From Ophelia neglecta (Eukaryota): a stretch of DNA of 64,000 bases. Location: NCBI GenBank assembly GCA_965285935.1, contig OZ260664.1, positions 83,762,001 to 83,826,000 of the forward strand, read 5' to 3'. Below the pieces are notes generated by a model. The model saw only the letters and a list, made by a program, of their open reading frames with translations, was not told the DNA's origin and did no database searches. This document shows, in pieces, positions 1 through 64,000 of the stretch (positions within the stretch are counted from its first letter, which is position 1; each line of letters opens with the position of its first letter). Position numbers and translations under genes: made by a program.

Positions 1-2298
1 TTACTTATTGCCCTTCTATTAACCTTGTGGTGCCTGTATCATCTGGATTAATATGACATTCTGAAGAGCCTTATTGATTTTACCTGTTAATGATTTGTGT
101 GCAATCTGTATTAATAAACAGCCACCTTGTATGGTTTATTAAAGATTTACAGATCTAATAGGAGAATTCTTGTCAGCCATTGTCACCTGAAATGTGTAGT
201 GATCTGTCTCACCCTTATCAATAGCTCCAATCCATGTTTTCTCTGCCCACTTTAACTTTCACTTTGTTTCAATCTCAACTAAGTAGTCCTTAAAATACTT
301 CTCTCATTTACTGCATCAGGAGTATTTTGGCCACCAGGCCTATAATTAGCATTGAAAAACATCAGCAAAAAAGAACATGATGCAATTTCATCCAAGACTC
401 CCAGGATGCAACAGATAAATAAAGACTTAAGTAGGTTCATACGAAGAAACAAGGAAAGGTAATTGCAGAAAAACTAAATGTATCCATCATTCTATCCCCT
501 GATCACTGGAGCTTGTATATTCAAGGAGTATTCATTTAACAGTCTCTGTGAATTCTTAAATAGAATAAAACCCATTTGCTGCAATGTAATCACAATGTTT
601 CAGAGTTAGAGACGATCTTCGGCAGAGTTTGGGACTGAAGTTTAAGATGTATGTTCAGTGGGCATCCCTGTATCTTCACTGGAGCCCATATCACTTCTGG
701 AGCTTGTCCGCCATCAAGCTCCACAATAATAATAAGACTGGTCAGAGGAGATGGGCTTTTTTCAAGGTTTGGCAATATGGGCAGTGTGAGTCAAGGCCAG
801 GCTTAATGTGGATCACCAGCCTACAGGTCGTAGGCTTTACACATGGCTGAAGGGCATAATGAGGGCATAATGATGGCTATACGAGGGCATAACGGGAAAG
901 AGAGAAAGGCCCAAAGTGGGAGCAATCTGCAGGAAGGAATTGGTGGCTTCCTGAAAAGACCAGTTGATTAATATTCTTAGCTATGAAAGAACCCCAGCTG
1001 AAACCATGGTAACTAGCCATTCACAGGAAATTCCCTTTTATTGGGAGTTTCCAGGGGTGGATGGTATTCAGGGAGAGAAAATAGCCATGTAGAGATAACA
1101 CAGCTGTCCCACTGCGCTAGCTATATTGTTTTATTCTCCTTTGTACAGCTCTCACATCAAACAATGCTTAAGCCAAAAGCTTATTAACATATAAAGGAGA
1201 AAAAAACTCAAAGCACAATATAATCAGTGTTTAAATCTCACTGCCTCTAGTACCTAACAACCCCACAATGCAGATATTGCTGCCAGAAAAAAAGAATGAG
1301 CAGAGGAGGAAGTAATTACAAAATAATCTATGTGTTTAATCTCTCTGGCCTGGCTGATTTAACATATTGAGAGCAGTCAGGCAGACTCAGCCAACTCATA
1401 ACTCACAATTAGGTCATTTATCAAACAAAACTGTATACAGAATCAATGCTTATATGATGGACAATGCCCTAGGTAGGGTGTTAATGCCAAACAGAAGACT
1501 TAACTGCCAATAGGAATCAGTTTGTGGTGTCAATAAGGGGTGAGGCAGACAGCCACAATAAGCTGTTGTCCCATATTGAGTAATGTGTAAGGCATGATCT
1601 GCATAGCAAGCTATCAATAGCAAACCCAAAGACATAAATTACTATGGCCAAGCCTTGTGCTTGTCATTGCCAGCCAATGTATGTGTTTGGAGCCTTATTG
1701 ACAGCATGATCCTTGACAATCATGCACCAGCAATGCAGTGCTTTGGCCTATTCTGGCAGATGACCTCAATTATGTGTTGTGCAGAGACAGTCTGCTACAA
1801 TTATCCAGATTCCAAATCTGATTAACGTATTGGGAATTGGAGCACCTTGTCAAGCCCGCATGCTGGCTCCCCTTTCATTACCGTCATTTCCCCCCTTTCC
1901 CTCAGCATGTCAACATTGGCTATGTCTTGTCCACATTGCCACAAATCTAATAATTCTCCAAACCCAGCCTTACCAAGCCGCCCACACTTGCCTGTTGGCT
2001 CCCACAATCACAAACTATTGTTCCCAATGGTAATATTTCATTTTGACCAGCTATAATCTGGAAAGAAGACAAATCCCTGGCTATGCCATTTCTACAACTT
2101 GGCAGTAAGTGGTTGTAATCTATACACCCAAAGATGGCACTATACTCCCAGCCACAATCATCTTGTATGGCTACTCCACGGCTCAGGACTAAGAGCAGAT
2201 ACTGACTGATTCCTTACATAGACCTTGTTTGAGCAGGATAAAAACAGAGACAAACTCACTTCTCAACTTCTTCAAACGGTATATGGCACAATCTTATA

Positions 2299-2473
2299 CA
2301 GTGAAACCTGCCTTAAAAACCACCTCTATATTCAGACCACCTGCCAATTCAGACCACTAAAATGAAGACCATTATATACAATTTCAATGTATAACCTGTG
2401 TAAACAGACCACCTCCATAATGAGACCAGTATTTGCCAGTCCCTTGGGTGGTCTTTTTTCACAGGTTTTACTG
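2299..2473. mobile_element. MITE family 1 (Tc1/mariner-pogo type), copy 1
   Basis: TA|CAGTGAAACCTG ... CAGGTTTTACTG|TA terminal inverted repeats with TA TSD. Homologous to 33855-34031 in inverse orientation. Confidence 0.85.
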
Positions 2474-2657
2474 TACTTTCTAATAGATATTATTAACTGT
2501 ATGGTACTATCATAGAATCTCAATCTTTCTAATAGATATTATTTACTGTATGATTCTATGATGGAATTTCATACTTTCTAATAGATATTAGTTACTGTAG
2601 GATTCTATGATGGAATCTCATACTTTCTAATAGATATTAGTTACTGTATGATTCTGT
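2474..2657. repeat. 49-bp tandem repeat, about 3.7 copies
   Basis: TAATAGATATT recurs at 2481, 2530, 2579 and 2628. The array starts at the right-hand TA of the MITE. Confidence 0.85.
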
Positions 2658-2780
2658 GAAGGTTAAAATGGTTGAGCAGATGACATTTATTACACCCAAG
2701 TCTGGTCTGGCACCAATAGGAGCCAGATAGCATGTCTAAAAGACACAAAACTCAACAGAAAATCTATAATCTGCTTTTAT

Positions 2781-2903
2781 AGCAGTTTCCTTGTCTGATA
2801 CACAAAACATGGAGAAAAAAGGCACAACTCTCTGACGAGAGACAAAAACAACCACAATAAATCAACAAAGAAATTCACTGCCTTATCAGACAAGGAAATT
2901 ACT
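2781..2903. repeat. Inverted repeat / MITE-like foldback
   Basis: AGCAGTTTCCTTGTCTGATA (2781-2800) pairs with TATCAGACAAGGAAATTACT (2884-2903), with a 15-bp perfect core. Confidence 0.7.
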
Positions 2904-2916
2904 GTTATTGGCGCTG

Positions 2917-3612
2917 CAGCCCAGGGCCCGGTGGCTGGAAGTGTTCAGCCCCAGGGCCCGGTGGCTGGAAGTGTTCAGCCCAGGGCCCGGTGGCTGGAAG
3001 ATCAGCCCAGGGCCCGGGGACTGGAAGTGTTCAGCCCAGGGCCCGGTGGCTGGAAGTGTTCAGCCCAGGGCCCGGGGGCTGGAAGTGTTCAGCCCAGGGC
3101 CCGGGGGCTGGAAGTGTTCAGCCCAGGGCCCGGTGGCTGGAAGTGTACAGCCCAGGGCCCGGTGGCTGGAAGTGTTCAGCCCAGGGCCCGGGGGCTGGAA
3201 GTGTTCAGCCCAGGGCCCGGGGGCTGGAAGTGTTCAGCCCAGGGCCCGGTGGCTGGAAGTGTTCAGCCCAGGGCCCGGTGGCTGGAAGTGTTCAGCCCAG
3301 GGCCCGGTGGCTGGAAGTGTTCAGCCCAGGGCCCGGTGGCTGGAAGTGTTCAGCCCAGGGCCCGGTGGCTGGAAGTGTTCAGCCCAGGGCCCGGTGGCTG
3401 GAAGTGTTCAGCCCAGGGCCCGGTGGCTGGAAGTGTTCAGCCCAGGGCCCGGTGGCTGGAAGTGTTCAGCCCAGGGCCCGGTGGCTGGAAGTGTTCAGCC
3501 CAGGGCCCGGTGGCTGGAAGTGTTCAGCCCAGGGCCCGGTGGCTGGAAGTGTTCAGCCCAGGGCCCGGTGGCTGGAAGTGTTCAGCCCAGGGCCCGGTGG
3601 CTGGAAGTGTTC
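2917..3612. repeat. 29-bp GC-rich minisatellite, about 24 copies
   Basis: Near-identical unit CAGCCCAGGGCCCGGTGGCTGGAAGTGTT. Explains three overlapping ORFs. Confidence 0.97.
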
Positions 3613-3811
3613 TTAACTGTAAACTCAGATTACAATTAGGATTAATGTGCTACATTGGGCTAGACTTGCTAATTAATGATTGGGGCTTAGGGAAGCTGGA
3701 TTTGGTCTTATAGCTTACTATTTTGGTCTCAAACTTAATCCTTGTCAATGGAAATACCGATAAACGTAATCTCAGCTAACCAATAATAAAAGGCTAGTCT
3801 ATATATTAACT

Positions 3812-3905
3812 GACATGTGATCCAAGGGTGGTCAGATCTGCTCTAGCAGACATGTGATTTGAGGGTCAGATCTGCTCTAGCAGACATGTGATCTGAGGGG
3901 TCAGA
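3812..3905. repeat. About 35-bp tandem repeat, 2.6 copies
   Basis: GACATGTGAT...GGTCAGATCTGCTCTAGCA repeated. Confidence 0.8.
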
Positions 3906-4944
3906 CCTATAGCTGTGATGCTATCATAATATACAGGTGTACACTGTAATCAAAGTCTCTGATGTCTCACTGGCCAGGCTGCTTGTCCAGTGTACAGATC
4001 AGTAAAAACTTGAGTGTTCAAAGTCACACTCTTCAGACCCAACTTGTTCCCTCCTAACTGAGTTCTAATATTACGGTTTGAGGGGTCTAAAATAGGCCCA
4101 CATGGAAAAGTCATCTACACTTGGTGTTCTTTTCATGGCACATATCAGCCAAATTAGGTATAGTATAGCTCCCTAGTTCAGCACAGGAGGCTTCACAGAA
4201 CGTCCCTGCCAATTTCATAGGATAGTGCCCCCCCCCCCTCCCTCCCTCTGGGTACTCATTACTATTAATATAGTCAAATCATATTTCAGGTTAAGTCTGC
4301 CACAGCCCTTGTAGGAAATGCATCGCCCTTGTTGGCTTCTCTGGCCGGGGCTGAAGACCTGTTTAGAAGAGAAGATCACAGGCTGCAGCCTTCACTCGAC
4401 TAATGGAATGTTTTGCCGGCTCCCACACACTCCACCAATCCATGCCTATTGATTTTGGCTATTCCATATTTGCTCTGTTCTCCTGGGTTTGGACTCTGAA
4501 GGACGGCCACCCATGCCCCTAGCTCTGACCTATTCTGTTGTTATTTCATGCCCCTTGCCATCCCTAACAATGGTTTGCTGTCTGTTCAGTGCCTGTATTC
4601 AATACCTGTAGATGTCATGACTGAATGTAACCCAATATTATGTATGATCAACATAGCTTAGATCAACTCTAGTCTTTATCAAGGCTCTGTACAGCTGTCT
4701 TGTAGTCTCTCTCTACTGGCTCACTACCATCAGACACCCTAAACATTGTCTTTACCCTTAGCAGTAAGTTCTTAAATTGGGATATCAACATCAACTGTGG
4801 TGGACGTTTAATTGTCAATGCCACATTAAAGACAAATGATTGGAGCAAAAAACTGATATAGCTAGCTGGTAGGTAGGATCCCGACCACAGCCTAACACTG
4901 GCCGACCCAGGATCCCGACCAATGCCAAACACTGGCCAACCCAC

Positions 4945-5045
4945 CTTTCAATGTCCTCCTGCAGCCAGGCCTGGAAGTCCGCGTATAAATCAGAGTTGTG
5001 CATTTGGGCGTATACTTCACTATATAACAACTGTCTGGAATCCAT
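4945..5045 (-). CDS. Putative alternative first coding exon of a short navigator isoform (33 aa + 2 nt)
   Basis: ATG in strong context (AACATGG) with in-frame stops upstream. Encodes MDSRQLLYSEVYAQMHNSDLYADFQAWLQEDIE and ends at GAAAG|gtgggt in phase 2, the same phase and same last two bases (AG) as exon F. Confidence 0.55.
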
Positions 5046-7164
5046 GTTCTGTTTAATGGTGATATCCTATGATCACAATGGTATGATAATCCTGAGAGAA
5101 CACACATTAGAGCTGCCTACTACACACATCGGTGTGGAGACCGGGCGGCCAGGAGGGATTCCCCCAAGTACGACTGGTGCCACCATGTCTGCCGTGTGTA
5201 TGGGAAACACTCAGGTTTGTGGTCAATTCTGTGAAGATACGGAGAACAGGACAACACTACAGCAGCCAATGGTGTCAGCTGATCCTCTGCAGCGACCAGC
5301 TCAACTACTCAGTGCTGGCAACGCAAATCAATCAATGGCCTGACCTCTACCGGTGAGAATCCGTATTAATCCTCCCCAGTCGGATGACGACAGCGAGAGA
5401 AGCTACCTTTACAGTCTGGGTAGTATATAGTATGACCTCATCACTGTAAGTGGCCTGGGGAGGTGGCCTGTGGAAGGACCTTACCAGGGGATCAGCGTCA
5501 CTAGAGACTACTACATTACTCTGTATACAGTTATCAATTCAACAAGAAGGTGTTGGCTCACAAGCTGGTGATTGTGTGTATGAATTATTCATGTGTGGTA
5601 GGTAATCATGAGCTGGCTGTACAAGACAACAGCTCCTTCTGGGTGTCAGCTCAACACCACACACACTGGCGATATATGCCATGGAAACCCATATATGGAT
5701 ATAGTCAGTTTGCTGGACATGATTGTCATACAATTCACTAATAATAACAAGATTGTTCCCTTGGCACACTGTCCAATCAAATGAGCCTCTCTGCTCCAAA
5801 AAAATGGGAGAAAACAATCACAGGAGTTAGTACAACAACACAGCGCTGCATATTGAGCAATGTCCTTGAGTACATATATACCGAGTCTCCTGCTCAAGGC
5901 ATCTGTAACTGTGGACTTGTACTGGGAAGAATCATCTCCCCAAATCCTAGGGTCACCAATACACGGTTATATGTGGTGATGAAACACATAATGCATTCAT
6001 AACAATAAATGCACTACTATAAGAGGGCAAATCATTCATAGAACCAAATGGGACACATTTTCATGTGCCCAATTTCATGGACGCAAAAATACATAATGCA
6101 AAATGCCTCATTAAGTCTAACCATTTAAGTCTCAAGCCAAACACTCCATCGCTCATTTATAATATAATTCCAAAGTTGCCCACTAGAGCCCATTAACTTA
6201 ATTAGGTAAACGATGAATAAAATTGCACAGTTGTGACAGGAAGTAATGAACGGAAATATAAGGCCTACAGGCAAACTGGGTTTTTGGAGCGGAGTCGTTC
6301 ACCAACCATACATACTGTTACAGCAACAGTATCTTCTAAAGTAAATATAAGATGCCTTGAAAGCAGTATTTTATTTAATAATAAAAACCACACAATGTCA
6401 CTTTTAACTATAATGCTCCCCCTTCCCTTCATTTCATTTAAGGTATTGATTGTAAAAAGCACGTTTAAATTTTGACCTCATCCCTTATGTCAACCACCTT
6501 AACTGATGAATGTTATTGTCAGGCCTGTCCCCTGCAGCCCACAACTCAGCTCTAATATATCACCAGGCAGCCAGTATGATGAATGAGCAGGCCAAGCCAC
6601 TGAGGCAATGGGGAGCAAGGGACCTAACTAGGTCAGGGCTCTACAGGGCTACTGGCTGAGCCTTCTTGGGATGTAATGACATACTGCATGATCTGGGCCA
6701 ATATATATTTATATACCAGCCAATATTATACACATTCAGGGCAAATTTGAAGAAAGCAATATCCTTTTAATTAACATATCAGTCTAGTGAACTATTTTGC
6801 ATGAATAAATGAAATTTATCCCATCACAAGTGGATGAAAGTCATATACCCTGTGAACACAAATCACTGACTGCCACAATCATGTAGAAGGCACCTTCAAA
6901 CATCACAGACTCCATCCACAGAATACCAAAAGGAGGACTAAATCTGACCTGATATGAAGTGATGTGAAGTGACACCATTCACTATAGTTTACATAATACC
7001 TGCTATGTTACAATTGTTTCCAGTCCCTAGAGGCCCCCAGGGAGATTCACTGACTAATTCTCCTCTAAACAGGCTAAATGATTAATGTACCATTAGGATG
7101 GGTATTGTTTCATTGTGCATTGTTTCTCTACCGATTAACCTGGTTACAAATCAGTGTGCTGCTT

Positions 7165-7790
7165 TTATGCCATCCGAACTAGTTTTATACCAGGTTTGTG
7201 CCATTTCAGCCAGCATTATACCAGATTTGTATCATTTCAGCCAGTTTTATACCATGTATTGTGCCATTTCAGCCAGTTTTATTCCAGGTTTTGTGCCATT
7301 TCAGCCAGTTTTATACCAGGTATTGTGCCATTTCAGCCAGTTTTATACCAGGTACTGTGCCATTTCAGCCAGTTTTATACCAGGTATTGTGCCATTTCAG
7401 CCAGTTTTATACCAGGTATTGTGCCATTTCAGCAAGTTTTATACCAGGTATTGTGCCATTTCAGCCAGTTTTATACCAGGTATTGTGCCATTTCAGTCAG
7501 TTTTATACCAAGTTTTGGCCATTTCAGCCAGTTTTATACCAGGTATTGTGGCATTTCAGCCATTTATAAATGGTCTGGTGCCATTTTAGTAGGTTTTGAA
7601 CCCAGTTTTATGCCATTTTCAGAAGGACCTGTGTCATTTCAGCAGGTGTTCTGCCATTTAAGCAGGTTTGTACTAGGATTTGTGCCATTTCAGCAGGATT
7701 TGTGCCAGAATGCATGCCAGTTCAGCAGGTTTTCTGTCAGGTATTGTGCCATTCATCATGTTTGTACAAGGTTTTGTCCCATTTAAGTAG
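7165..7790. repeat. 32-bp minisatellite, about 12 good copies plus a degenerate tail
   Basis: Unit GTGCCATTTCAGCCAGTTTTATACCAGGTATT. Confidence 0.95.
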
Positions 7791-8694
7791 GTCTTTTCCA
7801 AATCAGCATTTTTATCACAACATTTTAGCCTGTTCTGTACCATTTGGAGGAGTTTCCCACAGATTTGGTCATGTTCTGTCTACCAGTGTGAGCCAAGGGG
7901 CAGAGGTCAGCTGTCAAGTACTTTGATGTTACCCAGTGAAATATCTGCCTTTTCTCTGCTCCTATCAAACCTGTAGGTACAGAGACAGGTGAACAGGTGG
8001 ACCTTTATATATACAAGTCAAGGTGTATGACGCAGGCAATCTTCTCTTGGAATGTGGCTGTTCTACTGTCCTCCCCCTCTTCACCTGTCAAAGAGCCCAC
8101 TGTGTAAGGTGTAATTATACCATTAACATAGGTCATCCCCTGCTTAGTGATGTACAGACATCACTACAGACTAGACACCGACATCTAGGTTCTCACCTAC
8201 ATGTATGTAGTTAACTACAGACTGTGAAAACCAAACTCCAGTTCTCTCTTACTGTGAAACATTAGAGTGCCCAGATTCCCAACTAAATTCTAATTTTCTT
8301 AGTAATGTTCCTGCATTCCTACACTATTATTTCAGCATTTTGTCAGATGGAGTCACTTTTCTATTCACCATCCCTCCATTTTCCCCACTACTTGTACACA
8401 TCTAATTGCCCTGCTATACCCTGCTATAATAACCACAAGTACATGTACATATAACATAGTCAAGTTAGTATAAGCTGTTATCTCCTAGTCTGATGTGCCA
8501 TGCATGATACATGATCCCAGGAGTGTAGTCAAGCCCAGACCTGGCCATTATTAATACAAGAAGCTGGGAACAGGACACTGGGTTAATAAAATGACATTCT
8601 GCACAAGCGAACATCAGACATATTTTATGTTTTCCATCAGTAAAATTCAATGTTCCATATTTGAGCCAACCCAGACAATGGCAGAGCTAGGAAA

Positions 8695-8957
8695 CCTGAG
8701 GAGGGGTGGGGAACACCTGAGGAGGGGTGGGGGACACCTGAGGAGGGGTGGGGGACACCTGAGGAGGGGTGGGGGACACCTGAGGAGGGGTGGGGGACAC
8801 CTTGGGCGGGGTTGGGTATACTTCCCCCTGAGGAGGGTTGGGGGACACTTCCTCCTGAGGCGGGGTTGGGGACACCTCCCCCTGAGGAGGGGTGGGGTAC
8901 ACCTCCCCCTGAGGAGGGGTGGGGGGACACCTGAGGAGGGGTGGGGGACACCTGAGC
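8695..8957. repeat. 21/27-bp G-rich minisatellite
   Basis: Unit CACCTGAGGAGGGGTGGGGGA, with 27-bp variants. Confidence 0.92.
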
Positions 8958-10368
8958 AGGGACCAATATACACCTAGACTCGGGTAGGTTTACACTTATC
9001 TAGACAGTCCTTTAATCAAACTGAGACATGACACCCTCAAGCCAGCTCTGATCTATCAGACACTTCATAAATAGAGTCTGCTGAATCAAATGTCACAAGC
9101 TGCTCTGGACAGAACAGAAGTCCACAGCCTCTTAGTGACAGAAAGCGAATGTTTAAAGCAGGCTGTATTGTGAAGATCGCTGGCCAATGACAAAAGACAA
9201 CCTCCCTGAAGGTGTTAGGTTGCCAGTCCTCTCACACACATCAGAAGGCCTGGTATTTATACCTGCCATCAAGTGGCTCTACAATCAAAGAGCACATTTC
9301 ACAGCTCTTATATCTCTGTAAGCAGGCAAAAGAACATGGTTAACATAGAACATGACGAGGGAAAACTTGTAAAGAACGCCCCCAGTGGTTGCTAAGCTGC
9401 CAGCTCCCAGTTGTTCTTCAGGTATTCTATGATGCCTATACACAGGAAATACACTTGTCTTGGTCAAAAGAAATACATTTTCTAGTCCTTTGACCATTGC
9501 AGGATGTTTCTACCAAAGCGGGTTATATCAATGAATTGAGTCTCAAGTTCAGAATGGCCCCAGATACCTGCCTGAAGGAGGCTAGCTGTGCCAGCCAGAT
9601 TCATGTTAACCACAGTATTCAGTGTCAAACACAAATAGCACAGAGGGCATGACTGCTTCAAACGAATAGAGTTCTGTGGCCTTCACAAAAGAAAGACTAC
9701 GCTTAAACCTAGTTAGACTTGATATGTGTCGGTATTCAGTGATATTAACTTTAAATGTCATGTCAACTAGATAGAGTGTGGTTGAGAGTGCCTGTTTCTA
9801 AAGGAGATATTAATTCAATTCACAAGCCAGCCTTGACTGTGAATGGTGTGATTGCTGCTCAAACCTCTCCCGTCATATTCATACCTTTGTGTCCATACTC
9901 TGACCTCAGTGCCACTTCCATAAAGGTGTTAATGGTTTTTTTAAACCTTTGCTGATATTTCCAAAGAGGACATTTATCCACACACCACATTGCATGTATC
10001 CACCTTATACAGGAAACACATTTAACAAGGCCACCCTAACTAACTTGTCAACACGTTTGAAATAAACATACCTTCATGACATGGTAGATTGGTGATTAAA
10101 GTATCATTATAAATCACCAGTAAAAACAGTGATTTCCTTCAGGATATTTCGGGGCCTTTCCCGTTATGTTATTATAGATGAACTCCTGATTATTACCATT
10201 GAACATGATCAGTCGTCCTGGAGGTAAACACACAGTGGTCTGTAATTACCTGTGTGCAGGTTGGTACTAAGTATACCTGTACGGAGATTAACGATTAGTG
10301 GTCTTCAAATCAAAATACATCAGACTTTATTAACTTGGCCTCTAGGGCCGTCGCCTTGAGAGCTAACA

Positions 10369-10643
10369 GGCCCTGGGCCCTTTAAGAGACACACAGACTG
10401 GCCCCTTAGACTACCATGGGCAGTGCCAGGCCCTCGGCCCTTTAAGGGACACACAGACTGGCCCCTATCATGGGCAGTGCCAGGCCCTCGGCCCTTTAAG
10501 GGACACACAGACTGGCTCCTTAGACTACCATGGGCAGTGCCAGGCCCTCGGCCCTTTAAGGGACACACAGACTGGCCCCTATCATGGGCAGTGCCAGGCC
10601 TTCGGCCCTTTAAGGGACACACAGACTGGCCCCTAAGACTACC
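10369..10643. repeat. Alternating 60/54-bp tandem repeat (114-bp higher-order unit)
   Basis: GGCCCTCGGCCCTTTAAG recurs at 10369, 10429, 10483, 10543 and 10597. Confidence 0.9.
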
Positions 10644-10658
10644 TTGTAGTGTGCTAAT

Positions 10659-11117
10659 CCCTGGGCCCTAAAAGGTGTACATGTACTGGCCCTGGGCCCT
10701 AAAAGGTGTACATGTACTGGCCCTGGGCCCTAAAAGGTGTACATGTACTGGCCCTGGGCCCTAAAAGGTGTACATGTACTGGCCCTGGGCCCTAAAAGGT
10801 GTACATGTACTGGCCCTGGGCCCTAAAAGGTGTACATGTACTGGCCCTGGGCCCTAAAAGGTGTACATGTACTGGCCCTGGGCCCTAAAAGGTGTACATG
10901 TACTGGCCCTGGGCCCTAAAAGGTGTACATGTAATGGCCCTGGGCCCTAAAAGGTGTACATGTACTGGCCCTGGGCCCTAAAAGGTGTACATGTACTGGC
11001 CCTGGGCCCTAAAAGGTGTACATGTACTGGCCCTGGGCCCTAAAAGGTGTACATGTACTGGCCCTGGGCCCTAAAAGGTGTACATGTACTGGCCCTGGGC
11101 CCTAAAAGGTGTACATG
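10659..11117. repeat. 31-bp minisatellite, about 15 copies
   Basis: Almost invariant unit CCCTGGGCCCTAAAAGGTGTACATGTACTGG. Confidence 0.97.
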
Positions 11118-12930
11118 TGCATGTACAGGTCTCAATTGTAAGTAAACTGGATAGTGTTCACCTGCTACAAAGAAATCCCCCAGATTGTATTGTTCCAACA
11201 ACTCTACCTTATAAAATCATTATTTAATACCAATATCCTTTTAAAAACAACTTTTCTATAAGTTGGAACACTTCTTATTCTCCAATACACTTAGACTGGT
11301 ACACCTTTAAGACATTTTTCACATCATTTGTAGCCATTTTTAATGCCTATTGCAAAGGCCATACCTTACAGTTCTTCACATACATGACAAACCATACAGC
11401 AGGCTGTGTATTAAAACCCTACAATCCTCGTTCTCAAGTTACAGGCTCAGCTTTGTAATTAGCAGCATGTCAACAACATTTCAAGCGAGCCATAAACAAA
11501 GGTTGAATTGCTATTTGCTCTAGTAAAAAAAACCTGCATGTTGATGTACATGGATGACTTGCTGAACGTACTGCCAGAACATAACGTGAAAACTCCATGA
11601 CAAATATCCCCGAGACTGGCAACGGTAGACCAGTGGTTTGGTACTGTACAATAAACTATCACACTCTAACATAGCTAAGACTGTCAATCTGCCATCTGTG
11701 TATGTCTATAACCATATGAGTGACCGCCATACTCACTGTGATTTGGGATCCCTCCAGGTCAGGTGGTAATCCATATTTCACAAGAGAATCCAGTCCTCTA
11801 CTCACTACAAGCTGCCCAGACCCATACTCCCTACAACTATACACTCCTAACTTTCAAACATGCCGCCCACAATCAATGGATGTCTCAGATTGTCGACAAA
11901 TATCACATATTGCTGACATTTCTCCAGTAAGCTCCTCTTCCAAGCTTGCCATTAGCCATCCCAGCATGCACTTAATACATTATCAAAGCCTTGTCGCTAA
12001 ATCTTCCCGCTGAACATGTTCGGATAACAAGCAGCGGTGAACTTGTACATCTGAGTAAACTCTCATTTTATTGAACTCTTCACAGTTCAACATGTTAATT
12101 ATATTGATCTTGACTGAACCACACGTCTACTTCGCTTTGAAACTAATTTGAAATATATAAACGACACCGTCCTACAAAGTGACACGTTGCTAACCTCCTG
12201 AATGGCTGAAGGTATATGTTTTCTATATAATACACACTTAATTACATCATAATTCAATCAGTTTGTGTGAGCAGTTCGCAGCATACATTTACCTAGCCTG
12301 ATAAGGACCCTATATAATATTGACAGTGTAATATACTTGTATAGATAGCTACAGACTAGGTTAGTATGGCATTTTGTTACCACCGATATACTGTAAGGTA
12401 AAACAACTAATGTACCAGGGAAGGCATAATCTACTATCTAATAAAGGATACGTCCCTCCCACATTAATTCTAATATTTATGTTAGATTAATTTTAGAAAC
12501 AAATATACAAGACCTGAATTTCAAGTAATTGGATCTTTACCTTGACAAGAGCGGTAGAAGCCCTGTACACAGGAGACCTTTATATTCCTGGGTATATAAA
12601 CAGATGGAGAGTCCAGGTTATAGGCCAGGTTGTACAAAGGCTGGCTTGCACCCTGTATTCTTATCATTTTTTAAGCACTTCATACAATTTAAGGAAGGGT
12701 CTTTCATTCAGCTCTTATTGAGATGTATATACCATTTTTTCTACCTCCACAGACTAATAATGAATTGTTGACTGTAAAAGACATTCGGGTTTTACAGTGT
12801 AAATACTCATGTGACCTGTTATAATAAATGTAGGCTGAGGACACAGTCAATCGGTATGGGCTAACTATACAGCACCCCCCCCCCCCCTCCCCCCAGCAAC
12901 TCACCCTCCCTACACACATCTGTAGCCTCC

Positions 12931-13077
12931 TTAGCCAGGTTAACAGGTTGTTAATGTTACCACCACTTACCTGGAGGATTAGCCAGGTTAACAACTTGTT
13001 AATGTAACAAACACTTTACCTGGATGAATAGGTAGGTCAACAGGTTGTTAACATAACCCACACTTACCTGGAGGATT
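12931..13077. repeat. About 48-bp degenerate tandem repeat, 3 copies
   Basis: AGGTTAACAGGTTGTTAA...CACTTACCTGGAGGATT repeated. Confidence 0.75.
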
Positions 13078-15942
13078 TGAAGATCTCCAAGAAGTGATTA
13101 TCTCCATAAAAGGACTCTAAACTTATCCACACAATTAGTCAACTTTTTGTCTGTAAATTGCCTTTCAAATGAGCAGTGGTGGTGTTAAATAAAGACAGGC
13201 TATCAGGTTATCCTCTTAGGCCAAGCACATGGAAATGCTCGATCATCTGAGAGTTTATACCTTAACAATCCAAAGTGTGATTCTCATTCATTAAATGCTA
13301 ATGTCACTGTGTGAAATACAAGATAATATAATTGAGCCTTCAATTCTAAGCTGTACTTTTCCCTGTTTTGGTGAGATTCAGCCTGGCTGGGTATGTCTGA
13401 ACCTTTAAAGGGCCTGGTCACACATTCACCTGCTACTGGGGAGAATTTGGTCACAGTTTAGCCTTTAGCCTCAGATATAAACAGCTTTATGCTAAATACA
13501 CTCCAGCCTCTTACCCTTCAATTGGCTGCTATAGGGTATTCATAGACCTTGGTACAGGAGGTGGCTGGCCTCACAAGGGGGAGGGGGGCAGCACAGTGAT
13601 CATTGGTGAGGACAAGCTCTCTTAAACTAAGTAACTGGAGACAGCTGATAAAACCAAGAGTCATCAGTTCAAACATTAAAACCCTGATTTAAAGAAAACA
13701 GGAATCATTTATAGGACTGAGGCATGCTAGCAGTGTATCCACAATGCCCAGTGTCAGCCCCCCCCCCCCCCCCCCCCCTCTTTCAGCCTATACAGGCTCT
13801 CTGTACAGGCTCTCTCAGGTGGAACCCAGGCCCAGACTGTCATGTTATTATGGTCATAAGGACACCTCCATACATATAATACAAGCATGATACCAGGCTT
13901 AAAGTGGCTTGTAAAAACCCCGTTGGCCAGGTCCAGTAGGTTGTATATGAAGGTAGACTGATGTGTTTTAGCTAGAGATGGACAGTGGCCAGGTTTGACC
14001 GAGCACTGCCAGCCAGGCGGTGGTGAGAAAGGCCAGTTTATATGACAGGTGTCATACCCAGGCTTCAAGGCACCCAGTAATATATTATAAACCAGCCCCA
14101 GGGGACTGAAGTCACAGACCTCCCAAAGGTGTGTGGGTTCTGTGTGACCAGCCAACTATCTACACCAGACAATACAAACAACTTAACCTGTCATCACCTA
14201 TGTTAAACTGACGTTAGACAGAACTTGACTTTTAGACGGACATCAACGTACTGACAACAGACCACACTAAGACAAGAATTAATGTGGACAAACAAGATGG
14301 CATCTGTATCCAAGGATCTTTATGGGTTTTAATGCAAAATATAGGATACAATCTTTTGCTTAAAAATGAATGGTGTAAAAATAATACATGTTTATTAGGA
14401 TAAAAAGACCCTAAGCCTGCACAGCTCGTTGATATTTTTAATGGATGCCATTATAAATCTGTTTTACCTAATGGTACTAACAATTGTAGGAATGTCATCA
14501 TTTAGCTGAGAAAATAGACTGCATGCCCCCAAATAAACAACTCTCATATCAGCTAACACAACTGTCGAAATTTCCCAGTAGAAAAATCTTCAAATATTCA
14601 GTTTCACCGAGGTGGCGATACGGCGACATAAACACCATAATAACTGTGCTACGATAACATCGTAACAATCCAATACCATAACATGGTAATAACAGTCCTC
14701 TTTGTCCTGCCTATTGACAGCATTTTGTACAATTTATTATTGCACAAGAGCAATGAGTTAATAAAAAAGCACGAGAACGTAACCGCTTTTATCTCTGTGA
14801 AACTTTCAAGTTGCCGAGAGATAGAATCAGAGAGGTAAACACAGTCTAATTGTTGATCATTATTATAACAGTCCATGGTATTTTTTTTCCTGTAACCGTG
14901 CATTTTCATGTTTTTGGGATGCTTAAACATAATTTTCTTGTCTAACCAGACAAACACAGCATGTAAGATGATAAATCAAGTTGAGGTGACAACTCCATTG
15001 TTAGGTTAAACACACAAAATGGTAAAACTATTAAACAACAGACGGGACAATTCTCCACCATGAAGCCAGCCTGTCTGTACACAGGTGGAAATTCATTGGT
15101 ACAAATCTAAGAAGGCCTCTGGCAATGTCCACTTGCCCTGTGGTACATTGGCAAATTGAGAAAAAGTTAATAGGTAACTAAACCTGTTTCATTATTATAA
15201 CCAGTTTGAATATTATAGCTCTGAAAAGACGCAGAAAGATGCCAAAACTCTCAGGTCATGAGCACTACTACATCCATAAAACTCCATACTGAATTGTGCT
15301 GCCCTCTGTTGAATGGGAGAAACACGAGTTGTTCACACAGAACACCCATTTACCTACACTACTGACTCTCACAACCCACACCACTATGAACAGTTACCAA
15401 TATCTGGAGCAGAATACCATGTCTTTAATGTATATACCTCTCACACACATGTCAAACATGTAGATATGAACTTGGAAGATATAGATAACATCATGTATTA
15501 TAGTGCCGTGACATAACATGCCTTCCACTTACATTGTATGTGTTATTTAACCAATGCTCCCAATCATTCAGTCAGAGACAATAATCATACCCTACTGTGC
15601 CCCAGCACAATCTGCACCCAGGAAACGGGGAAATAGATGGTGGCAGGAAAAAAACAAAATTATCCTGCACCTAGATTTAACAATGGAAACAATTATGTGC
15701 CATGGAGGAGAAAATTGCCTATTGGCTGACATGTCTACCTGTCTAGGTGTCTCCGGGATACCTGCACTATGTGACATCGTAACGAACATAAGGTATGTCA
15801 CAGGAACTTTTGTGTTCGTTTTTTTTTTAATTAACAGAAGCTTTCAAAGCATGCATTTGCAAATAATTTTTTTACTCTTGCGAAACTGACCTACATAAAG
15901 GCAGGGTGAGCTTGTGTGTGCTTGGAGATGTTAGTGTATTCA

Positions 15943-16058
15943 CTCTCACTGGCCAGTGTATTGGCCAGTGAGAGAGGTCTCACGCTTGTAGTGAGTGGGT
16001 TACTGGCCAGTGTACTGGCCAGTGAGAGCGGTCCCACACTTGTAGTGAGTGGGTTACT
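15943..16058. repeat. About 54-bp tandem duplication with a 13-bp perfect hairpin
   Basis: CTCTCACTGGCCA-GTGTAT-TGGCCAGTGAGAG at 15943-15974. The segment ACTGGCCAGTG...GTAGTGAGTGGGTT occurs twice. Confidence 0.8.
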
Positions 16059-16102
16059 TGCTAGTCTATTAGCCTGCTAGTTGTAGTGCCAGGGTAACTT
16101 AC

Positions 16103-16280
16103 CTATCAGTGTCCAGCAGGCCTGAGGACTTCTCCATACACTCCTTGACAGCCATCATCCCCTCTCGGAACCTCTGCTGCATCTTCTTGGCGTAGATGGA
16201 GGCTCCGCCCTCCGAGAGGTACCCAGAGTTCACGTCCTCTACGTGGGTGGTCCGTAGGATGTCTCCGTCAGACATGTAAC
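16103..16280 (-). CDS. NAV2: Neuron navigator coding exon F (178 nt, phase 1 to 2), conserved GYMSDGD block
   Basis: Acceptor tatttcatag| and donor GATAG|gtaagt. GYMSDGDILRTTHVEDVNSGYLSEGGASIYAKKMQQRFREGMMAVKECMEKSSGLLDTD(S) closely parallels the vertebrate NAV2/NAV3 GYMSDGDVL...DDITSGYMTDGG...DGMAVVRETLQ block (recalled, not searched). Confidence 0.95.
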
Positions 16281-17677
16281 CTATGAAATATTAAATAATA
16301 CTTGAGCACAACAAGTCTCCATCAACACATCTGTGTGGAATCATTAAATAAACATCACTAAATGTATAGTGATTTCTATGGTCTGCTGAAATTTACTGGT
16401 AAAGTCCATGGTGGTCCTGATATTATCAATCACTAAACTTTTGTCCACAAACAGAAAACAGGACTGGTTCTCATGCCAAGCTCTATCAGACAGAAAGAGT
16501 ACATTTCGGTTATTAGCTAGACAAAAAAGCCTGTGTTTTGGTTCATTCCTTTTTTATTTTTGCCCCTGAACATCTTTCACCTACAGGCATACTCCGGTTT
16601 CTAATGTGCGAAACGCCTCAACACATTCCTGTCTATAGCTTTTTCTATAAGAACATACCATATCATGGTTTATACTCAGATGTGGATCATACAGATTCCA
16701 TAACGGGCTGGGCGGGATGTGTTTAAAAGGAAACATTATCTTAGCTTTACGATCAGTTAGGAGGCACTAACCAGCCTAGCGTCAAATCGCTAGGTGTAAC
16801 CAGGTAATGATAATGTTCAACTTTCAAACACACATCACAACATATACTTAATGTAAGGCCTACACTTGTAAGTGAACTTTATGAAATGGAAACAGGCACA
16901 AATAGGCACTCTGAGAGCTTTCACTTCCAGAATATACTCCCATGTCATTCATATCGTGCTAGTTCAAGTGCTATAGAAAAAAGTGCAATAGCATGGATTG
17001 ATGTTGGGGAAAACCAAAACATGGCTTTGGTTGCAAATTAGATTCAATTTGATTGTCATAAAACTCTCCTAGATGACTGAGCCTTATAACTCTGAGTACA
17101 AGATAACCCACCATCTTATAGCTGTTATTACAGGCATAAATAAGGCATTTCAAATGTAAGGGTCATGTTGTATGCATTGAAAAATGATAAAATGAGAGAG
17201 GATACATTACTGAACAACATTTGCGCCATTGAAAAAAGGGCCCAAGATTTAATAAATGTGAAGTACAATAATGCAGCTTTTGGTAACTTGTGTACAGGCA
17301 TAATATTTGTGTTACATGTATATCATTTCATGCTGGTTACATAAATATACCCAATAACAAGCAACAGAGGGGGAGGAGAGGAACTGCCTTTACAGCAGGG
17401 GCCTAAAGTAAGTGGTCACCTGGCAATACTACTTACTAGTGAACACACTGCTTGACCTGTAAACCCTCTCAGCTAGTTAAAATGCACACAGGTAACAAAC
17501 TTCTAATTCAGTGTCTTAAGTGATAGGTTTATATACCTGTGCAAGTTTACCACAGGTTTGGAATAAAGTTCTGATGAAGGCAGGTCTACCATCTGAAGGT
17601 TTGCTTGTTACCTGGTGTTCTGTCTTTTTTCAAAGCTGTGTGAGTTTAATATAAAAAAAATAGAGGGAATGACTTAC

Positions 17678-63833: not shown

Positions 63834-64000
63834 AAAGCCTGTAATTGAGGGATGTTACGGCTGTGGGTTTCCAGTGTCTCTAAGGTTACCAGAACGGGTC
63901 AAAGTAGCTGGGGAGTGCTTGCCTTTCCCAGGATACCGGGCGGGGTGGGGCCGGTGGGGTGGGGTATGGTATTAGCAAAGCTCCCTCCTTCCTGCATGGA

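What the first reader, a model, noticed from the sequence alone, without database searches (positions are those of the whole stretch)
4945..5400. Probable alternative first coding exon for an N-terminally truncated navigator isoform, hidden in the intron after exon F
Seen: on the minus strand a strong-context ATG (AACATGG, 5045) preceded by in-frame stops opens a non-repetitive, protein-like 33-aa peptide, MDSRQLLYSEVYAQMHNSDLYADFQAWLQEDIE. It ends at AAG|GTGGGT in phase 2 with the same AG split codon as exon F, so it could splice in frame to the same downstream exon. An acceptor with a branch-like CTAAT (ctctaatgtgtgttctctcag|, 5091) lies 46 nt upstream of the ATG, and a locally CpG-richer stretch (about 5130-5400) lies further upstream. 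Known: C. elegans unc-53 makes short isoforms from intronic promoters. Inference: an internal promoter makes a navigator lacking the CH domain and all ~1070 aa encoded in this window, with a new acidic N-terminus. If the 147-nt exon 5091-4945 were spliced into the long isoform, it would introduce stops (poison exon), giving a possible dual-use exon.
Basis: partly seen in the sequence, partly recalled or inferred. Interest (0 to 1): 0.75.

Follow-up and report, generated by a model that had tools for sequence, protein, structure and literature searches.

The report
Unproven alternative start exon in navigator intron
A short start-codon exon that would fit in frame onto the next exon of an invertebrate neuron-navigator gene really is in the sequence, but no RNA or cross-species data were available to show that it is ever used.

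Summary
On the minus strand, ATG 5045 opens 33 codons plus AG. It ends at AAG|GTGGGT (last exon base 4945), is preceded by in-frame TGA and TAG, and has an acceptor at 5092|5091. The frame prediction also holds. Exon F (16280-16103) ends GAT AG|gtaagt. The next constitutive exon lies 53.3 kb downstream and starts with T after ctttcag, so AG+T gives Ser followed by FDDSSSISS. Mollusc navigator proteins confirm that junction.

Usage is untested. The only 3 public runs holding the stretch are DNA, with continuous cover and no joints. The peptide has no meaningful relative in 1.84 billion proteins, in the own genome, or in 81 collected navigator relatives. Its codon usage and GC3 are unremarkable (P 0.13-0.17).

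Some evidence points the other way. The exon sits in a CpG-rich patch (98th percentile). It is one of three single-ATG, Kozak-context, strong-donor, phase-2 ORFs on the sense strand of this 64.5-kb intron, against 0.15 expected (nominal P 0.0005, post hoc, and gone at a looser donor cut-off). First readers had flagged the other two separately. Three gastropod gene models also start with unrelated short exons joined to the same acceptor.

Verdict: cannot tell, with a slight lean towards an unused pseudo-exon (0.45) over a real alternative first exon (0.37). If real, it is an ordinary kind of isoform.

The parts
4945..5091 (-). Candidate 147-nt exon: a 46-nt leader (5091-5046) with no ATG, then ATG 5045 and 33 codons plus AG.
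   Evidence: It is the first ATG after in-frame TGA and TAG. The open frame runs on for 43 more codons past the donor (76-aa ORF 4815..5045).
4939..4947 (-). Donor site AAG|GTGGGT. It matches 8 of 9 positions of MAG|GTRAGT and is in phase 2.
   Evidence: scored.
5092..5120 (-). Acceptor-like site gtaggcagctctaatgtgtgttctctcag| with a CTAAT branch-like motif.
   Evidence: It is needed only if there is an upstream non-coding exon, or for cassette inclusion.
4876..5450 (.). CpG-rich patch: 575 nt, GC 0.50, 19 CpG, o/e 0.53. The best 300-nt window is 5101-5400, with 13 CpG and o/e 0.60.
   Evidence: It is one of 10 such clusters in the 64.5-kb intron. It is not a tandem repeat except at its edge.
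5073..5186 (-). Upstream ORF starting at ATG 5186 (context gacATGg) and ending at the stop at 5075-5073. A second, out-of-frame ATG at 5107 overlaps the main ATG.
   Evidence: Both would hinder translation of the 33-aa ORF if transcription started upstream of them and the leader were not spliced.
4875..4943 (.). A 34-nt tandem duplication (2.0 copies, 88% matches) that begins at the T of the donor GT.
16103..16280 (-). Exon F of the navigator gene (GYMSDGDIL...SSGLLDTD). It ends GAT AG|gtaagt in phase 2.
   Evidence: It is 68% identical over 62 aa to the Sinanodonta protein P0081. The next constitutive exon is outside the window, at L007 1633-157 (G000:C7:83713633-83712157, minus strand), with acceptor ctttcag|T.

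Best explanation
The stretch is most likely a pseudo-exon: a chance open frame with a usable-looking start codon and donor, lying 11 kb into a 64.5-kb intron of the animal's single navigator gene. It is probably not used, or used only at noise level. The CpG-rich patch around it would then be a separate feature, for example a regulatory element or younger sequence. What is shown: the sequence features, the frame compatibility, and the lack of any detectable relative. What is inferred: that it is not used.
For: The bare configuration is common. 42 and 44 first-ATG ORFs of at least 30 codons reach a GTRRG donor on the two strands of the window. At a donor match of 7 or more of 9 positions, the sense strand of the intron has 20 such ORFs against 23.4 expected, and 11 in phase 2 against 8.7-9.1 expected. 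Coding signals are not distinctive. The codon log-likelihood is -0.29 per codon; 17% of 235 intronic null ORFs score as high, and 34 true-exon chunks have a 5th percentile of +0.36. GC3 is 0.61, reached by 12.6% of 372 antisense null ORFs. The frame stays open for 43 codons past the donor. Pfam gives nothing above threshold. The only hit among 1.84 billion representatives, P0001, is a translated tandem repeat that matches one 17-aa motif at 22-23 bits per copy. There is no second copy in the own genome at E<=10. Against 81 navigator relatives the best E is 0.73, and that match is not at an N-terminus. Between the CpG patch and the ATG lie a strong-context upstream ORF (ATG 5186) and an overlapping out-of-frame ATG (5107).
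Against: At the stringent setting (at least 30 codons, donor 8 or more of 9, phase 2, purine at -3 and G at +4), the sense strand of this intron has 3 such ORFs. Only 0.15 are expected from 443,137 strand-bases of null sequence (nominal P 0.0005). Without the Kozak condition there are 5 against 0.58-1.21 expected (P 0.0003-0.008). The exon lies inside a CpG patch at the 98th percentile. GC3 minus GC2 is 0.36, reached by 1.3% of null ORFs. None of the 40 listed SNPs in the 3.3 kb laid falls within 4945-5091, where about 1.8 would be expected; this is not significant, and 21 further SNPs were not shown. Three gastropod gene models start with a short unique exon joined to the same acceptor.
Confidence: 0.45

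Rival explanations
1. It is a real alternative first coding exon. An internal promoter, in or upstream of the CpG patch, produces a transcript whose 33-aa acidic N-terminus is spliced from 4945 to the FDDSSS exon. The product would be a navigator lacking everything upstream, including the CH domain, but keeping the coiled coils and the AAA+ domain.
For: Frame compatibility is confirmed: AG plus T gives Ser. In relatives the acceptor is the one used directly after exon F: 5 spliced proteins (P0015, P0018, P0021, P0078, P0081) read ...DDDS|FDDSSS. The ATG is the first after in-frame stops, with A at -3 and G at +4. The donor matches 8 of 9 positions. The CpG patch is at the 98th percentile. There is an excess of stringent phase-2 ATG ORFs on the sense strand, 3 against 0.15 expected. 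Of the 33 motif-bearing relatives, 3 are gene models (P0012 Biomphalaria 'MEC', P0010 Elysia with 37 aa, P0079 Pomacea with 14 aa, 1,505 aa long and with the AAA+ domain) that start with a short unique N-terminus joined to this exon by a non-Ser split codon. A shorter Nav2 transcript lacking the CH-domain part is reported for mouse (passage of PMC9877351).
Against: There are no RNA data. No conservation is detectable. The three gastropod N-termini resemble neither it nor each other, and they may be artefacts of gene models split by the giant intron. Codon and GC3 scores are weak, and weaker than for the other two candidates in the intron. The enrichment is post hoc, with thresholds set at this candidate's own values, and it disappears at a donor match of 7 or more of 9. 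There are upstream ATGs if the leader is unspliced.
Confidence: 0.37
2. The 147-nt unit is used as an internal cassette (a poison exon that introduces TGA after exon F), or it belongs to a non-coding transcript or regulatory element marked by the CpG patch. In either case the 33-aa frame is incidental.
For: The acceptor and donor are both present, 147 nt apart. Inclusion would read ...AG G ATT ATC ATA CCA TTG TGA. The CpG patch spans 575 nt and extends beyond the exon on both sides. Rfam gives no family for the region: within 1-17000 the only match, at 2016-2109, has E 0.58.
Against: There are no RNA data. Nothing distinguishes this acceptor-donor pair from the many decoy pairs in a long intron. 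I did not count such pairs.
Confidence: 0.13

Closest known systems
N-terminally truncated navigator isoforms (mouse Nav2 shorter transcript; C. elegans unc-53 short isoforms)
   Same: The proposed product would lack the N-terminal part with the CH domain and keep the C-terminal coiled coils and AAA+ domain. The review PMC9877351 (passages seen) says the Nav2 hypomorph mouse loses the large CH-containing transcript but keeps the shorter one.
   Different: Those isoforms are supported by RNA; this one is not.
Gastropod navigator gene models that begin at the FDDSSS exon (P0012 Biomphalaria glabrata, P0010 Elysia marginata, P0079 Pomacea canaliculata)
   Same: Each has a short unique N-terminus (3, 37 and 14 residues) joined in phase 2 to the same conserved acceptor. 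P0079 runs on to the AAA+ domain (1,505 aa).
   Different: Their N-terminal peptides share nothing with the candidate or with each other. They are computational models whose RNA support I could not check. P0012 and P0010 are also cut short at the C-terminus, so they may be fragments of a gene split by its long intron.
Pseudo-exons (decoy splice-site pairs) in long introns
   Same: It has an acceptor, a donor and a short open frame deep in a 64.5-kb intron, with no conservation or expression evidence. Similar configurations occur at 20-23 per 64.5 kb per strand at a slightly looser donor cut-off.
   Different: It sits in a CpG-rich patch. It also belongs to a small sense-strand excess of strong-donor, phase-compatible ATG ORFs.

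Membership tests
Neuron navigator (NAV / UNC-53 / Sickie) gene | Conserved central exons (GYMSDGDIL...; FDDSSSISSGEISD...; coiled-coil exons) | tested here: met
   Exon F is 68% identical over 62 aa to P0081. The FDDSSS exon, the L004, L008 and L012 exons match P0079, P0081 and P0078. Source names on the hits are 'neuron navigator 2/3' in Aplysia, Elysia, Biomphalaria and Plakobranchus.
Neuron navigator (NAV / UNC-53 / Sickie) gene | N-terminal calponin-homology domain | tested here: inconclusive
   tblastn of the first 900 residues of P0081 (which carries PF00307) found no CH-domain match in the window or in the downstream loci at E<=5. The CH exons may lie upstream of base 64000 or be too short to score.
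Neuron navigator (NAV / UNC-53 / Sickie) gene | C-terminal AAA+ domain | not tested
   The gene runs on beyond the 110 kb fetched downstream. P0079 aligns only up to its residue 795 of 1,505.
Alternative first coding exon from an internal promoter | Start codon with upstream in-frame stop, and a donor whose phase fits the next exon | tested here: met
   phase 2 onto an exon starting with T; AG+T gives Ser.
Alternative first coding exon from an internal promoter | Transcription start and a spliced junction seen in RNA | not testable with these tools
The look-up of sequencing runs listed 3 runs from 1 sample and 1 study, none on record as RNA. When laid, they cover 28, 30 and 28 of 30 bins with no joints, so they are DNA.
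Alternative first coding exon from an internal promoter | Conservation of the exon in relatives | tested here: inconclusive
   No relative was found. However, the database search could detect only near-identical peptides: the self score is 64 bits, and I estimate that roughly 50 bits are needed for E<0.001 in a library of 2.4e11 residues. No close relative's genome was reachable.
Poison (stop-carrying) cassette exon | Acceptor and donor flank a unit that brings an in-frame stop when included | tested here: met
   a 147-nt unit, with TGA at the sixth codon after the junction.
Poison (stop-carrying) cassette exon | Regulated inclusion seen in RNA; usually strong conservation | not testable with these tools
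   No RNA runs and no relatives' genomes were available.

The most novel reading that the evidence does not exclude
The 64.5-kb intron before the FDDSSS exon holds an array of at least three internal promoters or first exons. Each would give a CH-less navigator with a different N-terminal peptide: this acidic 33-mer, a Met-Gly...Ser peptive fitting the myristoylation pattern (L002 799-696), and a hydrophobic, membrane-anchor-like 37-mer (L003 4242-4130). One cytoskeletal AAA+ protein would then be sent to different cell compartments by choice of promoter.
Probability: 0.15. Interest if true: 0.55.

Novelty: new member of a known kind. Interest (0 to 1): 0.25.

Why it matters
If the exon is used, it would show that a lophotrochozoan-type navigator gene makes a CH-less short isoform from an intronic promoter. 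Such isoforms are reported for mouse Nav2 and, as I recall, for unc-53. It would also add a new acidic N-terminus whose role could be tested. That would be a routine addition to the gene's annotation, not a new principle. The more useful result is methodological. Frame-compatible ATG exons are easy to find by eye in giant introns, and only the stringent subset here exceeds chance. RNA data for this species are what is missing.

Tried and rejected
1. Repeat or transposon origin: rejected. The 501-nt stretch and the peptide match only themselves in the genome. Only a 34-nt, 2-copy duplication abuts the donor.

2. Homology of the peptide to P0001 (E 1.1e-17): rejected. P0001 is a roughly 61-aa tandem-repeat translation, and the score is the sum of 10 copies of one 17-aa motif at 22-23 bits each.

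3. Known RNA family in the region: none.

4. Pfam domains in the six surrounding ORFs and the two sister candidates: none above threshold.

5. Conservation in paralogous introns: not possible. The genome shows a single navigator locus with my query and with P0003 and P0013.

6. Reaching annotated short isoforms of relatives. Three word searches, stepping the query length up (492, then 706, then 1,135 aa), gave 16, 65 and 16 proteins. Most are exon-level ORFs. Three gene models start at the FDDSSS exon, and none resembles the candidate.

7. I first took the genome for a fish. The CpG depletion (o/e 0.23) fits that, but the single navigator locus, the mollusc-named best hits and other agents' notes point to an invertebrate.

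8. A donor weight matrix from this gene's own exons: dropped, because only about 8 junctions could be mapped. I used matches to MAG|GTRAGT (a recalled consensus) instead.

9. Literature on unc-53 internal promoters. Four searches and passages of five papers gave only the mouse Nav2 statement in PMC9877351. The other papers were seen as search listings only. That review's supplementary isoform workbooks were closed.

The peptide and the exons were searched separately.

Full report
WHAT IS THERE. Read on the minus strand, the window has an acceptor-like site gtaggcagctctaatgtgtgttctctcag| with the first exon base at 5091. A 46-nt leader without ATG follows, holding in-frame TGA and TAG. ATG is at 5045-5043 (A at -3, G at +4). 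Then come 33 codons (MDSRQ...QEDIE, 7 acidic residues against 1 Arg and 1 His), the two bases AG (4946-4945), and GTGGGT. The unit is 147 nt. The open frame continues 43 codons past the donor (76-aa ORF). A 34-nt, 2-copy duplication starts at the T of the donor. The 501 nt around the exon, and the peptide, match only themselves in the 762-Mb genome, so this is not a repeat.

GENE CONTEXT. Exon F is 16280-16103 (GYMSDGDIL...SSGLLDTD) and ends GAT AG|gtaagt. I fetched 110 kb downstream. The next navigator exon is L007 1633-157 (G000:C7:83713633-83712157). Its acceptor is ggatctttcag|T TTT GAC GAT TCG, which needs two bases from the previous exon: AG+T gives Ser, then FDDSSSISSGEISD. Five spliced proteins of molluscs (P0015, P0018 Aplysia, P0021 Tegillarca, P0078 Plakobranchus, P0081 Sinanodonta) read ...DDDS|FDDSSS directly after the exon F sequence. 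This is therefore the next constitutive exon, and the intron is about 64.5 kb long. The candidate lies 11.0 kb into it, and its donor is 53.3 kb from the acceptor.

THE ORGANISM. The genome has one navigator locus. The named hits are molluscan. Other agents' notes on this genome call it an annelid- or mollusc-type invertebrate and say that no RNA data exist. I did not find the CH domain in the window, so it probably lies further upstream.

EXPRESSION. The look-up of sequencing runs gave 3 runs from one sample and one study, none on record as RNA. Laid on 3750-7050, their contigs cover 28, 30 and 28 of 30 bins, with no joints and only bubble-type breaks, so they are genomic DNA. They differ from the window at 61 or more single-letter sites in 3,301 nt. 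Of the 40 sites listed, 0 fall within 4945-5091, where about 1.8 would be expected; this is not significant, and 21 sites were not shown. One of 4 listed indels, a T inserted after 5051 in the minority of depth, lies 6 nt upstream of the ATG. So the RNA test could not be done.

CONSERVATION.
- phmmer of the 33-mer against 1.84 billion representatives gave one hit, P0001. It is a translated tandem repeat that matches one 17-aa motif at 22-23 bits per copy, so it is noise.
- That search could only have seen near-identical peptides. Isoforms may also be hidden behind cluster representatives, so the blank is weak evidence.
- Three word searches, each querying a single exon or a stored protein and never a joined model, collected 81 navigator relatives. 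Local BLASTP of the candidate against them gave a best E of 0.73, inside the C-terminal part of P0079.
- Of the 33 proteins carrying the FDDSSS motif, most are exon-level ORFs with Ser (from the acceptor AG+T) before the motif. Five are spliced to exon F.
- Three are gene models that start with a short unique peptide joined by a non-Ser split codon: P0012 'MEC', P0010 with 37 aa, and P0079 with 14 aa (1,505 aa long, with AAA+ Pfam hits). These are precedents for models starting at this exon. However, their N-termini are unrelated to the candidate and to each other, and I could not check their RNA support.

IS IT MORE THAN CHANCE?
- In the window alone, 42 (minus strand) and 44 (plus strand) first-ATG ORFs of at least 30 codons reach a GTRRG donor.
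- Across the whole intron I then counted ORFs of at least 30 codons from the first ATG after a stop that reach a donor matching 8 or more of 9 positions of MAG|GTRAGT.
- The sense strand has 7 such ORFs, by phase 0/2/5. Three of the five phase-2 ORFs have a purine at -3 and G at +4.
- The null comprised the antisense strand of the intron, both strands of the rest of the gene region, and both strands of 8 random 10-kb pieces of the same chromosome: 443,137 strand-bases in all. It has 24 such ORFs (phases 10/11/4), 3 of them with Kozak context (1/1/1).
- Expected against observed: all phases, 3.5 against 7 (P 0.065). Phase 2, 0.58-1.21 against 5 (P 0.0003-0.008). Phase 2 with Kozak, 0.15 against 3 (P 0.0005).
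- One hundred order-2 Markov introns gave a mean of 0.18, and 17 of 100 had at least one.
- Caveats: the thresholds equal the candidate's own values. One of the five lies in a minisatellite. At a donor match of 7 or more of 9 there is no excess (20 against 23.4; phase 2, 11 against 8.7-9.1; Kozak, 3 against 1.0-1.3).
- The other two Kozak-context members are L002 799-696 (MGTVTS..., CAG|GTAAGT) and L003 4242-4130 (MVVELC...). First readers had flagged both as separate findings.

INTRINSIC SIGNALS.
- The region is strongly CpG-depleted: o/e is 0.227 over 174 kb. The window 5101-5400 has 13 CpG and o/e 0.60 (98.2nd percentile for CpG count and 96.3rd for o/e among 3,408 windows, where exons fill the top ranks).
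- The patch 4876-5450 is one of 10 CpG-rich clusters in the intron.
- The codon log-likelihood, trained on 1,249 codons of this gene's own, compositionally biased exons, is -0.29 per codon. 17% of 235 null ORFs score as high.
- GC3 is 0.61 (P 0.13). GC3 minus local GC gives P 0.16, and GC3 minus GC2 gives P 0.013.
- The two sister candidates score better: GC3 0.68 and 0.84, with P 0.04 and 0.008.
- The CpG cluster upstream of the L002 candidate turned out to be a tandem repeat.
- If transcription began in the CpG patch and the leader stayed unspliced, a strong-context upstream ORF (ATG 5186) and an overlapping out-of-frame ATG (5107) would precede the main ATG.

JUDGEMENT. Nothing shows use. 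I put an unused pseudo-exon at 0.45, a real alternative first coding exon at 0.37, and cassette, non-coding or regulatory readings at 0.13. The sense-strand excess of strong, phase-compatible ATG ORFs, together with the gastropod models, makes an internal promoter somewhere in this intron plausible. This candidate is the weakest of the three by coding signals. If it is real, it is a new member of a known kind: CH-less navigator isoforms. The mouse Nav2 shorter transcript is described in passages of PMC9877351. The unc-53 statement is recalled, not confirmed in any passage I read, and the review's supplements were closed.

EARLIER NOTES OF THE SCAN. On neighbouring DNA of the same intron, first readers had proposed two analogous isoforms (s1-733692, s1-733656) and a recursive-splice exon (s1-733683). 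No follow-up was shown for any of them.

Noticed in passing
L002 696-799 (G000:C7:83742696-83742799), minus strand: A sister candidate first exon. It encodes MGTVTS... (34 codons plus AG) with a perfect CAG|GTAAGT donor in phase 2, a Kozak context and GC3 0.68 (P 0.04). The CpG-rich cluster just upstream (L002 876-1575, o/e 0.83) is a roughly 170-240-nt tandem repeat with copies 82-90% alike.
   Followed up: partly
L003 4130-4242 (G000:C7:83726130-83726242), minus strand: A second sister candidate. It encodes a hydrophobic 37-mer MVVELC... with donor CAG|GTAAGC in phase 2 and a Kozak context. GC3 is 0.84 (reached by 0.8% of null ORFs). It is single copy in the genome. The nearest CpG cluster is 2 kb upstream.
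   Followed up: partly
L005 4268-4491, minus strand: A 15-nt minisatellite repeats the donor-like AAG|GTGGGT five times in phase 2 behind one ATG (MVFQEP...). This inflates raw counts of candidate first exons.
   Followed up: no
L004 12-2693, minus strand: An 894-codon open frame inside the gene, about 7 kb after the exon at L004 9598-9813. It is rich in internal repeats (GRxSPQxGP, GNPxxxVGQNPQ, SPGHSS). tblastn with the five mollusc navigator proteins at E<=0.001 listed no match to it. It could be a lineage-specific giant exon or not part of the gene.
   Followed up: partly
window 2917-3612, 7181-7562, 8690-8961, 10367-11118: The intron is studded with long minisatellites, for example 29 nt x 24 copies at 97% identity with GC about 0.69, and 31 nt x 14.8 copies at 99%. 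They produce most of the long 'ORFs' in this part of the window.
   Followed up: no
window 3750-7050: The three public DNA runs (one sample) differ from the assembly at 61 or more single-letter sites in 3,301 nt (about 1.8%). So polymorphism or divergence is high enough that a modest population sample could test constraint on short exons.
   Followed up: no
window 1-64000 and the 110 kb downstream: CpG o/e is 0.23 overall, while coding exons keep 0.6-0.9. This is very strong depletion for an invertebrate gene body, and it makes the few CpG-rich intronic patches stand out.
   Followed up: partly
window 22312-64000, minus strand: No calponin-homology match was found in the window with the CH-bearing Sinanodonta protein at E<=5. 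The most upstream match is the MLDKFKLF... exon at about 22350. The CH exons are probably beyond base 64000.
   Followed up: partly
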